Assembly (NCBI RefSeq): GCF_000142905.1
Contig: NW_013657647.1
Coordinates: 62,001-126,000 of the forward strand
Direction of reading: 5' to 3'
DNA length: 64,000 bases
Origin: Thecamonas trahens ATCC 50062
Taxonomy: Eukaryota > Protista > Apusomonadida
Below, piece after piece: positions 26,839 to 30,383 of the stretch (position 1 is the stretch's first letter; the number at the start of each line of letters is the position of its first letter). Position numbers and translations under genes: made by a program. Under the pieces are notes generated by a model. That model was not told the DNA's origin and did no database searches. It was given only the letters and a program-made list of their open reading frames with translations.

Positions 26839-28691
26839 TCACTGGAGCGAAGCATCCACGTCCGCATCAACCTCCACAAACGACTCGGCAGGGGAGCCAT
26901 CGACGGCTCCATCGCTAGAGGCTGCGCTCGTGGTCGACGTTGTCGACGCCGCGAGGACCGCCACAGCCTCGGCGGCGGCGGCGGCAGCAGGCGAGGACAC
27001 GTCGCCGGTCTCCGGCTCGGCAGCGTCGTAGTAGAAGAAGGATGAAAGCCAGCCGGTTGGCTTCTGCGCCGGGCCGGTCTCGGGCAGGTCTGACGCCTTG
27101 ACCATCTCAAACGACGATGCAATGTCGGCGATCGACTCGGCAATTGATGCGTCGACAGCAAGCGTGTCGGCAACCGTCACCTCCTCAACGTCCGAGACAT
27201 CGGCATTGTGAGTTGACGCCGTCGACGACGCCACACCGATCGACGATGCCACTGAGATCGAGAGCTCCGACTCGGAGTCGTCGGCATCTGCGTCGGCGTC
27301 GACTGCCAGCCGCGCACGGCACTCGTCGAGCTGCGCGCGGAGCGCAGCGTTCTCCTCTCGCAGCTGATTCGTCGCCGCACGCTGTGCGGCGCACGCCACC
27401 TCGAGGCTCTCAATCTGGGCACGGGCCATGTCCGACGACTCCGAGCTGGCCGCCGCCGAAGCACTCACTTCACGGGCGTACTGGTCAAACTGCCGCCGGC
27501 GCTCGCTGATCTCGGCTTTGGTCCGCGCCAGCGCCTCCTTGCACGCAGCCTCGGTCTTGGCCGACTGTCGCGACGCCTCCTCGGTGATCCGCAGCTTGGC
27601 CTCGTTGAGTGCCTTGTACTCGGCAGCCCGCTGGTGCTCAAACGCAGCGCGCGCCGTCTCGCACTCCTTGGCCCGCAGCGCGAGGTCGTTCTCCTGCGCC
27701 TGCAGCTCGGCCTCGAGCGCTGCTGCCGCCGCCTCACGCTCCTCAAGCGCCTCCTCGCGCGTCGTGAGCTCCGCGTCGCGCGCGAGCATCACCCGCTCCA
27801 GGTCAGCAACCCGCTTGCACTCGCTCGCCAGCGAAGTCTGCAGCTGGTTCACCGCCGCCCGCTTACGGTCGAGTGCCACCTTCTCTTTCTCCAGCGCCGC
27901 CCGCCGCGCCTCGAGCTGCTCCGCCTGCGCCGCCATCGTTGTCGGGCTCGGAAGCGCCGGCTCGGTCGCCGCCGCCGCCCGCGCCTCGGCAAGCTCGGCC
28001 TCCAGCCGCGCCACCGTCTCCTCGCGCTCGGTCTGCACCTGCGCCACGTTGGCAATGATGTTTCGCAGTGAGGCTGCCTCCGACTGATGCTGCGCCACCA
28101 CCCGCCGGAGCTCGGCCACCTCGGCTCGCTGCATGTCGATGACCTCGCGCAGCGAAGCCATCTCGTCACGCGCGGCATCCTCGGCCGCGTGCAGCGCCGC
28201 CTCGAGCTCCGACACCCGCACAATGGCCACATCGCGCTCGTTGGCCGCCGTCTCGCGGTCGCAAGCAAGCGCATCGCGCTCGGCCACTGCTGCCGCAAGC
28301 TCATCCTCAAGCTGGGCGGTCACCGCCGAGACCTTGTACAAATGGCCCGGCGGGAGGAGCGGAGAAGCCGAGGCAGCGCGAGCGGATGTCAGCGACAAGA
28401 CGAGGATCTCGAGCTCGGCTCCGCGACCAACAACATAGTTGAGGTAGTCGAGATCAACCTGTGACTCGAGAGCGCTGATCTCGCCAGAGCCAGTTGCAGC
28501 GAAAAAACCATCGACTCGGGATCTACGTTGTGAAAGTTGCCCAGAGCAATGGCATGAAGTGCGTCCAAGGTCAAGTTGGGCACCTCGGCCGTGGTGTTCT
28601 TCTTGCCGTACACAAGGCGAACATGGCTTGCCTGGGCCGTAGGAAGCACACTAGGTGGCGGTGCCGGTGACGACGATCCACATCCAGACAT
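26839..28691 (-). CDS. PB1-like / coiled-coil / acidic LIR-motif protein, paralogue A (apparent -1 frameshift at 28502-28507)
   Basis: MSGCGSS...VRLVYGKK..VPNLTLDALHAIA (ORF 28389..28889) continues in the -1 frame as SGEISALESQVDLDYLNYVVG into ORF 26839..28398. Long E/A/R heptad region; acidic tail with SSFEMV and ESFVEV. Confidence 0.8.
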
Positions 28692-28832
28692 CTTTCTTGT
28701 CTTCCTCCCTTCCTCCTTTTCCCTTGTCACAGCCAGAGTCAAGTGATGCCCTTGCTTGCCTTCCCCTGCCTTCTGGCTAAACCGCGCGTGTGCTGTCGGT
28801 GGAAGCACTTTTTGGAACATTGCCTCGGATGG

Positions 28833-28864
28833 CCCACTTGCCCACTTGCCCACTTGCCCACTTA
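28833..28864. repeat. (CCCACTTG)x4 tandem repeat upstream of paralogue A
   Basis: Visible directly. Confidence 0.8.
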
Positions 28865-29076
28865 CGCACATTGTCCTCGCACATGCCAAAGAGCCTTTCT
28901 GTGAACTATTACTGTTTACCTTTGGTCATGTCATGCTGTGAGCTACACGGGCATACCCATAATCTCTCGGCTTGGTTGCCTCGTAGTAGCTCCCAGGCTT
29001 TATCGCCGCCCTGGCTGTGGCCGTAAGTGTGTCGTCTCTCTGCGTCGCTCGCCCGCTCTCGCCGGCTTGCCGTCTC

Positions 29077-30383
29077 TCACTCGTCGTCGGCGGCGGCAGC
29101 GTCGTTGGCATCGACATTGGCATCCATACCACCAGCGAGGAGCAACGTTGACCAGCCATCTGACTCGTTGGGTACATTGAGCATGTGAGGCAAGTCAGAC
29201 GCGTCAAGATCGGAGACCGCCACGTCTTCGGAGATCATGCTCCACTCGCACCCGCCGTCGTCGGTCTCCGACTCGATGCCCAAGCCCGACCGAGAGAGCG
29301 ACCACCCCGAGTCTGTAATCGACGAGGCATCGGACGAGCACACGCTTTCAAGCAGGTCGTCGTCAGAGTCTGTGTCGGCGAGCTGGGCCCGAAGATGGGC
29401 AAGCTCGGCGCGCTGCGCCTCAAGCGCCGCGCGCTGCGCCGCAACCACCTGCTCGAGACTCGTGATCTCCGCCCTCCGTGCCGCCTGGCTGCCCTCGTAC
29501 TCGATGCACTGCAGCGCAGTGTCTCGCTTGGCCTGCGCCCGAATGGTGCGGGCGTCGGCCTCGGCTCGCTTGCGGATCTCGTCCGCCATCGCTTCGGCCG
29601 CCGCCAGCCGCGTCTTCTCGGCAGCCTCAATCTCCAGCCAGCGGGCCCCGATCCTGGCTTCATCCTCCTCCAGCGACGCAATGCGCGCTGCCAGCTGCCG
29701 GTTGTCGGGCACCGTGTTCCTTGCGCGGTCGATCGCCGACAGCTCGGCCTTGCGACGCTGCTCAAAGGCGATGCGGTCGCGGTTTAGTTGGTCAGCCTTG
29801 GCCGCCAGCTCTGCTGCTGTGGTCTGCACCGCCTCGGCCGCAGCGCTTGACTCCAGCTCGGTGGTCAGCTGCACGATCCGGGCTTGGAGCGACTTGACAT
29901 GTTCGCGACATGCCTCTGCAGCTTGCTCGGCGTCGAGCACCGCCTCAAGCTTCGCCTCGAGCTCCTTGATGCGGGCCGCACTTGCCATCTCAGCTTCTGC
30001 CGCCTCCTTTCGGTGCTTTTCAAGCTCAGCTGCGAGTCGGACCTTCGAGTAGCGGGGAAGGAGCAACGGGGCAGCGGGTTGGGCGGCGGTGAGAGAACAG
30101 CGATGTTGATGACGCCGTTGCCGACGACATAGTTCAGGTGGTCAAGATCGAGCTGCGACTCGAGCAGCCGGATCTCTCCCGACTTGTTGTGGGTGGTCAG
30201 TACATACTTGGCATCACGAAGCTTAGCGAACCGGTTCCTGGCGAGGTCGTGCAAAGCCTCAAAGGTCAGGTTCGGAAGCCACTTTTGGGCGACCCTGCCG
30301 TCGAAGGAGAGCTTGACGCCAGTGGCGCGCGCCTCCGGCGGCACCATATCCGAGCTCTCAGGGGCAGGCATCGATGCAGACAT
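29077..30383 (-). CDS. PB1-like / coiled-coil / acidic LIR-motif protein, paralogue B (apparent -1 frameshift at about 30068-30071)
   Basis: MSASMPAP...VKLSFDGR..LPNLTFEALHDLA..SGEIRLLESQLDLDHLNYVVG joined to ORF 29077..30066. Aligns with paralogue A (AFEQRRKAELSAI vs AFEHQRAAEYKAL). Tail carries CEWSMI and DGWSTL. Confidence 0.8.

What the first reader, a model, noticed from the sequence alone, without database searches (positions are those of the whole stretch)
26839..30383. Tandem pair of PB1-like + coiled-coil + multi-LIR proteins: candidate undescribed selective-autophagy receptor family
Seen: once a one-base shift is allowed in each, two adjacent co-oriented genes share an N-terminal domain of about 90 aa (VKLSFDGR..PNLTFEALH..SGEIRLLESQLDLD vs VRLVYGKK..PNLTLDALH..SGEISALESQVDLD), a long coiled coil and an acidic Ser-rich tail. 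The tails are aromatic-poor, yet carry [W/F]xx[L/I/V] cores with Ser/acidic residues just upstream: SSFEMV (27100-27111), ESFVEV (26869-26880), DDGGCEWSMI (29233-29244) and ESDGWSTL (29143-29154). Known: a PB1 oligomerisation domain plus an ATG8-interacting LIR defines p62/NBR1 receptors (p62 LIR DDDWTHL). Inference: these are ubiquitin-independent (no ZZ or UBA seen), multivalent ATG8 adaptors, perhaps hetero-oligomerising through PB1. The ORF track hides this because both genes are split.
Basis: partly seen in the sequence, partly recalled or inferred. Interest (0 to 1): 0.8.

Follow-up and report, generated by a model that had tools for sequence, protein, structure and literature searches.

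The report
Tandem PB1-like coiled-coil protein pair
Two neighbouring genes of the protist Thecamonas trahens encode proteins with a very divergent PB1-type docking domain, a long coiled coil and an acidic tail. The domain call holds up, but the proposed role as a new autophagy-receptor family rests only on short motifs that are barely commoner than chance and could not be tested.

Summary
Two co-oriented minus-strand genes share a ~80-90 aa N-terminal domain, a heptad-periodic coiled coil and an acidic Ser-rich tail.

The genome is Thecamonas trahens; gene A is AMSG_06483. Each "one-base shift" is one missing base in a homopolymer (C4 at 30068-30071, T6 at 28502-28507). This is most likely an assembly under-call. 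The public model of A hides its break with a 38-nt fake intron.

The N-terminal domain is probably a divergent PB1:
- ESM neighbours are PB1 proteins.
- hhalign against the organism's own PB1 domains gives P~0.001, with 0 of 200 shuffles reaching the score; ubiquitin and UBX do not match.
- The invariant beta1 Lys is kept.
- Pfam and HMMER find nothing, and the acidic OPCA motif is degenerate in both genes.

The autophagy reading is weak:
- The core count is not above shuffled tails (P~0.08).
- Only B has cores that fit the published stricter patterns (SSFEMV, ESFVEV).
- The tails do not align above chance.
- There is no cargo- or ubiquitin-binding domain and no orthologue anywhere.
- ATG8 docking could not be run.

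A canonical NBR1 exists elsewhere in the genome. TFG (PB1 + coiled coil + tail LIR) is the nearest known architecture. Earlier notes of this scan report the same one-base-missing pattern on other DNA of this genome.

The parts
29077..30383 (-). Gene A (public model AMSG_06483, P0001, 422 aa). It reads about 435 aa if the frame break is taken as one missing base.
30084..30320 (-). Gene A PB1-like domain (residues 22-100), with the beta1 Lys at residue 24. The OPCA position reads HNKSGE...SQLDL.
30068..30071 (-). C4 run where the frame of gene A breaks (one base missing).
30030..30067 (-). A 38-nt GT..AG stretch removed as an 'intron' in the public model. In the shifted frame it reads as coding and matches paralogue B (LLLPRYSKV... 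vs LLPPGHLYKV...).
29377..30054 (-). Gene A coiled coil (~226 aa, Ala/Glu/Arg/Leu-rich, nearly free of Pro and Gly).
29080..29376 (-). Gene A acidic Ser-rich tail (99 aa, 26 Asp/Glu, 3 Trp, no Phe or Tyr). W motifs: SGWSLS 29293-29310, CEWSMI 29233-29250, DGWSTL 29143-29160.
26839..28691 (-). Gene B, the paralogue of A. No matching protein model was found in either protein collection.
28393..28625 (-). Gene B PB1-like domain, which spans the frame break. Arg replaces the beta1 Lys.
28502..28507 (-). T6 run where the frame of gene B breaks (one base missing).
27310..28344 (-). Gene B coiled coil (~345 aa).
26842..27309 (-). Gene B acidic Ser-rich tail (156 aa). SSFEMV at 27100-27117 fits xLIR. 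ESFVEV at 26869-26886 fits xLIR and cLIR. An FFAT-like FYYDAAE lies at 27016-27036.

Best explanation
These are two old tandem paralogues of Thecamonas trahens, and both are most likely intact in the organism. Each apparent frameshift is a single base under-called in a homopolymer of the assembly. Each gene encodes an elongated scaffold or adaptor protein with three parts. The first is a highly divergent PB1-type beta-grasp domain that keeps the basic (type-B) face, Lys24 in A and Arg in B, but has a degenerate acidic OPCA motif. The second is a 230-350 aa parallel coiled coil that should dimerise the protein. The third is a disordered acidic, Ser-rich tail carrying short aromatic motifs. The inferred mechanism has three steps. 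The coiled coil makes a dimer. The PB1-like heads dock onto an OPCA-bearing PB1 partner; Thecamonas has at least nine canonical PB1 proteins, NBR1 among them. The tails recruit a third factor through short linear motifs. ATG8 is the single most plausible tail ligand for gene B, since ESFVEV and SSFEMV fit published LIR patterns, but this step is inference only. The architecture, the frame-break anatomy and the PB1 resemblance are shown. Dimerisation, the PB1 partner and the tail ligand are all inferred.
For: Organism and gene A identity. Break anatomy and the fake intron. Earlier notes report the same genome-wide pattern. GC3 frame profile is consistent with the frame switch. PB1 evidence: 29 of 30 named ESM feature hits are PF00564, best score 0.93 with 195 shared features. 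Structure neighbours of the Atlas's own model are aPKC, NBR1, Par6, MEKK3 and plant TPR-PB1 proteins. hhalign against nine of the organism's own PB1 domains scores 21.8-22.1, P 0.0012-0.0017, against a shuffled mean of 9.1 +/- 1.9 (maximum 16.2; 0 of 200 reach the observed score). The same test against the organism's own ubiquitin and UBX sets gives P 0.21 and 0.41. hmmsearch gives E 0.0016 at Z=1 in the same register. MAFFT aligns the domain end to end and keeps the only invariant PB1 column, the Lys. AF2 on that alignment gives pLDDT 91.6 with a bb-a-bb-a-b order, and its best PDB matches are the AtNBR1 PB1 (TM 0.82) and aPKC iota; this run is not independent of the alignment. Coiled coil. 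Tail composition and motifs.
Against: Pfam PF00564 gives no hit even at E<=10, and the own-genome PF00564 scan does not list this locus. An exhaustive HMMER search of 1.84 billion representatives finds no PB1 protein and no other relative. The PDB sequence search is blank. AF2 on the family's own three-row alignment is low-confidence (pLDDT 51.9, helix 2 not formed), and its Foldseek hits are not significant. No transcript or read evidence was available to prove that the breaks are errors. No partner or ligand was tested.
Confidence: 0.6

Rival explanations
1. A and B are ubiquitin-independent, multivalent ATG8 adaptors, that is, selective-autophagy receptors. PB1 plus the coiled coil would provide oligomerisation, and two LIRs per tail would bind lipidated ATG8.
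For: Gene B carries SSFEMV (xLIR) and ESFVEV (xLIR and cLIR) in a disordered acidic tail. Shuffled tails give 0.22 xLIR and 0.037 cLIR matches on average, so P is 0.018 and 0.037 (patterns from PMC5119064). Thecamonas has a canonical single-exon ATG8. An oligomerisation domain plus a LIR meets two of the three hallmarks of sequestosome-like receptors (PMC9582228). TFG shows that a PB1 + coiled coil + tail-LIR protein can act in autophagy (PMC8126910).
Against: The total core count is not above chance (P 0.08). Gene A's cores (EWSMI, GWSTL) fit neither published pattern. The tails are not alignable above chance, so conservation of the cores cannot be claimed. No cargo- or ubiquitin-binding domain is present. 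No orthologues exist to test conservation. The iLIR authors state that such patterns give many false positives. The ATG8 docking test could not be run.
Confidence: 0.2
2. The frame breaks are real, and one or both genes are decaying pseudogenes of a lineage-specific duplicate.
For: Both copies are broken. Gene B has no protein model in the databases searched. No orthologues are known.
Against: Each gene has only one break. Both breaks are the same kind (one base missing, inside a homopolymer). Open frames of 329 and 551 aa follow the breaks, and heptad periodicity is preserved in them. Many other windows of this assembly are noted to have the same one-base-missing breaks in otherwise intact genes.
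Confidence: 0.1
3. The N-terminal domain is not PB1 but another small alpha/beta or beta-grasp module, or a new fold. On this reading the PB1 signals come from a shared secondary-structure pattern.
For: All sequence-to-profile searches at database scale are negative. The unbiased AF2 run is low-confidence, and its weak hits include MCU N-terminal domains rather than PB1. The confident AF2 model used an alignment that already contained PB1 domains.
Against: Language-model features and the Atlas ESMFold model, neither of which uses that alignment, both point to PB1. The profile signal is specific to PB1 over ubiquitin and UBX. It is in register with the invariant Lys and with the ..G[DE]..L.S..DL segment.
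Confidence: 0.15

Closest known systems
TFG (Trk-fused gene protein)
   Same: N-terminal PB1, then a coiled coil, then a long disordered tail that carries a functional LIR. It has no ZZ, FW or UBA domain (PMC8126910).
   Different: The TFG coiled coil is about 28 aa and its tail is Pro/Gln-rich. Here the coiled coil is 230-350 aa and the tail is acidic and Ser-rich. No sequence relationship was detected. TFG was not compared directly.
NBR1 / p62 (sequestosome-like receptors)
   Same: An N-terminal PB1-type domain, a self-association element, and LIR-like motifs in an acidic disordered region.
   Different: No ZZ, FW or UBA domain is present. Thecamonas has its own canonical NBR1 with PB1, ZZ, FW and UBA at G000:C4 about 532800-535200. 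The OPCA acidic cluster is lost here.
Coiled-coil soluble receptors (CALCOCO1, NDP52/TAX1BP1, optineurin)
   Same: A long dimerising coiled coil with short ATG8-binding motifs. Gene B also has an FFAT-like motif, as does CALCOCO1, which uses one to bind VAP in ER-phagy (PMC7396842). From memory, optineurin's LIR core FVEI resembles B's FVEV.
   Different: No SKICH, zinc-finger or UBAN domain is present, and the head domain is PB1-like instead. This is resemblance by architecture only. Nothing was tested.
Type-B PB1 domains (e.g. Par6, p67phox, MEKK2/3)
   Same: The beta1 Lys/Arg and nearby basic residues are retained, and the acidic DEDGD cluster is absent or degenerate. Fold neighbours include Par6 and MEKK3.
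   Different: Those domains are recognised by Pfam PF00564 and this one is not. The residual ES..DLD acidic residues leave the type uncertain.

Membership tests
PB1 domain (Pfam PF00564) | Match to the family HMM at or above the gathering score (23.6 bits) | tested here: not met
   No hit at E<=10 on gene A's complete domain. The locus is not listed in the own-genome PF00564 scan. An HMM built from the organism's own PB1 domains gives only 5.0 bits.
PB1 domain (Pfam PF00564) | Beta-grasp fold with bb-a-bb-a-b order | tested here: inconclusive
   The unbiased AF2 run has pLDDT 51.9 and helix 2 is missing. AF2 on an alignment that includes PB1 domains has pLDDT 91.6 with the full topology, and its best match is AtNBR1 PB1 at TM 0.82, but this run is not independent. 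Neighbours of the Atlas ESMFold model are PB1 proteins at low TM.
PB1 domain (Pfam PF00564) | Conserved Lys on strand 1 (basic, type-B face) | tested here: met
   Lys24 of gene A falls in the only invariant column of nine of the organism's own PB1 domains. Gene B has Arg there.
PB1 domain (Pfam PF00564) | OPCA acidic motif (type-A face) | tested here: not met
   DEDGD is replaced by HNKSGE in A and ATGSGE in B. Only the Glu after Gly and the later DL(D) remain.
Sequestosome-like selective autophagy receptors (definition in PMC9582228) | LIR motif that binds ATG8 | not testable with these tools
   Motifs are present, but only B's fit the published patterns.
Sequestosome-like selective autophagy receptors (definition in PMC9582228) | Homo- or hetero-oligomerisation domain | tested here: met
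   A PB1-like head plus a heptad-periodic coiled coil. This is in silico only.
Sequestosome-like selective autophagy receptors (definition in PMC9582228) | C-terminal ubiquitin-binding (or other cargo-binding) domain | tested here: not met
   No UBA, UBAN, zinc-finger or any other Pfam domain is found in either protein. NCBIfam gives only coiled-coil noise.
NBR1 family | FW (four-tryptophan) domain together with PB1 or ZZ (PMC9582228) | tested here: not met
   There is no PF16158 hit at this locus. The genome's FW domains lie on C4 and C12.
TFG family | Sequence homology to TFG, with a short coiled coil and a P/Q-rich tail | not tested
   No TFG sequence was obtained from a tool. The exhaustive search returned no eukaryotic relative at all. 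The coiled-coil length and tail composition differ.

The most novel reading that the evidence does not exclude
Gene B, and perhaps gene A, is a ubiquitin-independent soluble autophagy adaptor of a new architecture. A type-B PB1-like head would cap or dock onto an OPCA-bearing PB1 protein such as Thecamonas NBR1. A long coiled-coil dimer would act as a spacer. The tail would combine two LIRs with an FFAT-like VAP-binding motif. That would make it an apusomonad analogue of CALCOCO1-type ER-phagy receptors, evolved independently.
Probability: 0.12. Interest if true: 0.6.

Novelty: new variant of a known kind. Interest (0 to 1): 0.3.

Why it matters
If the PB1 call is right, these are PB1 domains too divergent for Pfam or HMMER to detect. 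They sit in an architecture (PB1, very long coiled coil, acidic motif-bearing tail) not described for any PB1 protein, in a lineage near the root of Amorphea that uses PB1 domains in many unusual fusions. Practically, the result corrects one public gene model: AMSG_06483 loses 13 codons to a fake intron. It also points to a neighbouring paralogue that has no protein model. The autophagy-receptor idea would matter for the evolution of selective autophagy outside animals, fungi and plants. At present it is a motif-level hypothesis confined to two paralogues of one species.

Tried and rejected
- **Trypanosomatid origin.** This was my first guess from GC content and dinucleotide repeats. It was rejected by the 99% match to Thecamonas AMSG_06483.
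- **A real intron at either break.** For gene A the only option is a 38-nt GT..AG stretch whose shifted-frame translation matches paralogue B. For gene B the paralogue spacing leaves no room for an intron.
- **Programmed -1 frameshifting.** Neither site has an X_XXY_YYZ heptamer. This was judged by reading the sequence.
- **Relatives elsewhere.** The word search on both C-terminal pieces found only self for A and nothing for B. The exhaustive profile search found self plus a spurious bacterial repeat protein, P0002. The own genome holds only the two copies. The look-up of encoding contigs had no record.
- **Family libraries.** Pfam and NCBIfam gave only sub-threshold coiled-coil noise. The PDB sequence search was blank.
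- **Conservation of tail motifs between the paralogues.** ASDLP and GW are shared, but the local alignment score is not above shuffles.
- **Structure of the domain.** AF2 on the shallow family alignment was low-confidence and its Foldseek hits were not significant.
- **ATG8 docking.** I asked for Thecamonas ATG8 with the gene B tail. The test was not done, which is no evidence either way.
- **Literature.** No paper links Thecamonas to PB1 or NBR1 beyond the NBR1 review.
- **Joined sequences.** B's pieces were used as separate rows and references. For A, the public model P0001 was used as returned by the tool.
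Full report
**What is there**

The window is from Thecamonas trahens ATCC 50062, an apusomonad whose genes contain introns. The C-terminal frame of the upstream gene matches the public protein AMSG_06483 at 99% (P0001, 422 aa). 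Two co-oriented minus-strand genes lie 385 nt apart.
- Gene A runs 30383->29077.
- Gene B runs 28691->26839.

Each gene is read in two frames.
- A's N-terminal frame is window:30060-30383:- and its C-terminal frame is window:29080-30066:-.
- B's pieces are window:28503-28691:- and window:26842-28494:-.

**The frame breaks**

Both breaks are of the same kind: one base too few, inside a homopolymer.
- In A the break is at CCCC, 30068-30071.
- In B the break is at TTTTTT, 28502-28507.

In B, one extra T makes the distance from the conserved Phe to the conserved SGEI 20 residues, exactly as in A. No intron fits there.

In A, the public model removes 30030-30067 (38 nt, GT..AG) as an intron, giving ...PLPP|ELEK.... 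Read in the shifted frame, those 38 nt encode LLLPRYSKVRLAAELEK, which parallels B's LLPPGHLYKVSAVTAQLEDE. I therefore read the "intron" as a device of the annotation pipeline that costs the model 13 codons.

The GC3 frame profile is consistent with this reading.

Earlier notes of this scan describe the same pattern elsewhere in the genome: single missing bases at homopolymers in otherwise intact genes. One follow-up also describes a fake intron. Those notes are unchecked leads, but they agree with what I saw here.

An assembly under-call is the most likely cause. A real pseudogene cannot be excluded without reads.

Gene B has no protein model in either collection searched.

**Shared architecture**

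- N-terminal domains: 38% identity for the first B piece and 64% for the second.
- Coiled coils: 35% identity over 144 aa, E 1e-5. They are nearly free of Pro and Gly. Heptad periodicity is z 4.9 for A and 7.2 for B.
- Tails: 99 aa in A and 156 aa in B, acidic, Ser-rich and aromatic-poor.
- The genome holds no third copy.

**Is the head a PB1 domain?**

Database-scale sequence methods say nothing.
- Pfam gives no hit at E<=10.
- The PDB sequence search is blank.
- A profile search of 1.84 billion representatives returns only gene A itself and a spurious bacterial repeat protein.

More sensitive or orthogonal tests agree on PB1.
1. ESM Atlas features: 29 of 30 named neighbours are PF00564 clusters, best score 0.93 with 195 shared features.
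2. The Atlas's own ESMFold model of P0001 has as neighbours aPKC, NBR1, Par6, MEKK3 and plant TPR-PB1 proteins. TM scores are low because they are normalised over a mostly helical and disordered chain.
3. I collected nine canonical PB1 domains from the same genome and compared profiles.
   - hhalign gives score 21.8-22.1, P 0.0012-0.0017.
   - Column-shuffled queries give 9.1 +/- 1.9, with a maximum of 16.2; 0 of 200 reach the observed score.
   - The same query against the organism's own ubiquitin and UBX alignments gives P 0.21 and 0.41.
4. hmmsearch with the organism's own PB1 HMM gives E 0.0016 for a single test, in the same register.
5. MAFFT aligns A's domain end to end with the nine PB1 domains. 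Lys24 falls in their only invariant column.

AF2 adds little independent weight.
- On the family's own three-row alignment it is low-confidence (pLDDT 51.9). It forms b-b-a-b-b...b but not helix 2, and its Foldseek hits are not significant.
- On the alignment that includes the nine PB1 domains it is confident (pLDDT 91.6, full bb-a-bb-a-b). Its best matches are AtNBR1 PB1 (TM 0.82), aPKC iota, Par6, p62 and MEKK.
- This last result depends on the alignment and is a consistency check only.

I put the PB1-type fold at about 0.8.

**PB1 type**

The acidic OPCA cluster is degenerate in both copies (HNKSGE in A, ATGSGE in B, against DEDGD). The basic strand-1 residue is kept. By the charge-complementarity rule summarised in PMC9582228, two such domains are poor partners for each other. 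They should need an OPCA-bearing partner.

**The LIR claim**

- The cores exist, but four [WFY]xx[LIV] cores in 255 tail residues is not more than shuffled tails give (P 0.08; P 0.03 if two acidic or Ser/Thr residues are required upstream).
- I applied the published patterns from PMC5119064. Gene B has two xLIR matches, SSFEMV and ESFVEV, and the second also fits the stricter cLIR pattern. Shuffled B tails give 0.22 xLIR and 0.037 cLIR matches on average, so P is 0.018 and 0.037.
- Gene A has no match in its tail, because Ser after the Trp is outside both patterns.
- The tails share ASDLP and a GW, but their local alignment is no better than shuffled tails. Positional conservation of the cores cannot be claimed.
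- No orthologue exists in which to look.
- Thecamonas has a canonical single-exon ATG8.

**Context**

Thecamonas has a complete NBR1 with PB1, ZZ, FW, an acidic stretch and UBA in one frame. This agrees with the statement in PMC9582228 that apusomonads have NBR1.

A and B lack the FW, ZZ and UBA domains and are not NBR1 or p62 family members. They meet two of the three hallmarks of sequestosome-like receptors only at the motif or in-silico level, and they fail the third, a cargo- or ubiquitin-binding domain.

The nearest described architecture is TFG: PB1 at residues 10-91, coiled coil at 97-124, and a disordered tail with a functional LIR (PMC8126910). So "PB1 + coiled coil + LIR without ZZ/UBA" is not unprecedented. 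The coiled-coil length and tail chemistry do differ, and no homology was detected.

**Verdict**

The PB1-like reading is supported below family thresholds. The autophagy-receptor reading is a reasonable but untested hypothesis, better for B than for A, at about 0.2.

The most likely description is a lineage-restricted pair of dimeric coiled-coil scaffolds with a divergent type-B-like PB1 head and a motif-bearing acidic tail. The splits are assembly artefacts.

B's pieces were handled separately by reference.

Noticed in passing
window 27016-27036 (minus strand, gene B tail): FYYDAAE, within SSFFYYDAAEPE, matches the FFAT core EFFDAxE at positions 4, 5 and 7, with Tyr at positions 2 and 3. The consensus is taken from PMC7396842. 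A VAP-type MSP gene exists at G000:C10:114082-114787. Gene A has no equivalent motif.
   Followed up: partly
window 26839-28691: Gene B has no protein model in either protein collection. It appears to be unannotated or badly mis-modelled in the public record, probably because of the T6 frame break inside its first domain.
   Followed up: partly
L035:7-2262:+ (G000:C4): The Thecamonas NBR1 orthologue has PB1, ZZ, FW, an acidic stretch and UBA. At the position before the UBA where a LIR is expected it reads DDDLVIVGDF, with no aromatic residue. This may be a non-canonical Leu-type LIR.
   Followed up: no
window 28835-28870 (minus strand, upstream of gene B): A short tandem repeat of the 8-mer AAGTGGGC, about four copies, lies in the A-B intergenic region about 150 nt upstream of B's start codon.
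   Followed up: no
L004:1495-2808:- (G000:C9): A 437-aa frame with a TPR-like N-terminus, a Pro/Gly/Arg-rich linker and a canonical C-terminal PB1 with DEDGD. This layout resembles p67phox/NoxR.
   Followed up: no
window about 31900-32380: A run of N (314 in the window) is flanked by long GA/CT and CA/GT dinucleotide repeats, just upstream of the LigB-like gene. This is an assembly gap inside microsatellite DNA.
   Followed up: no
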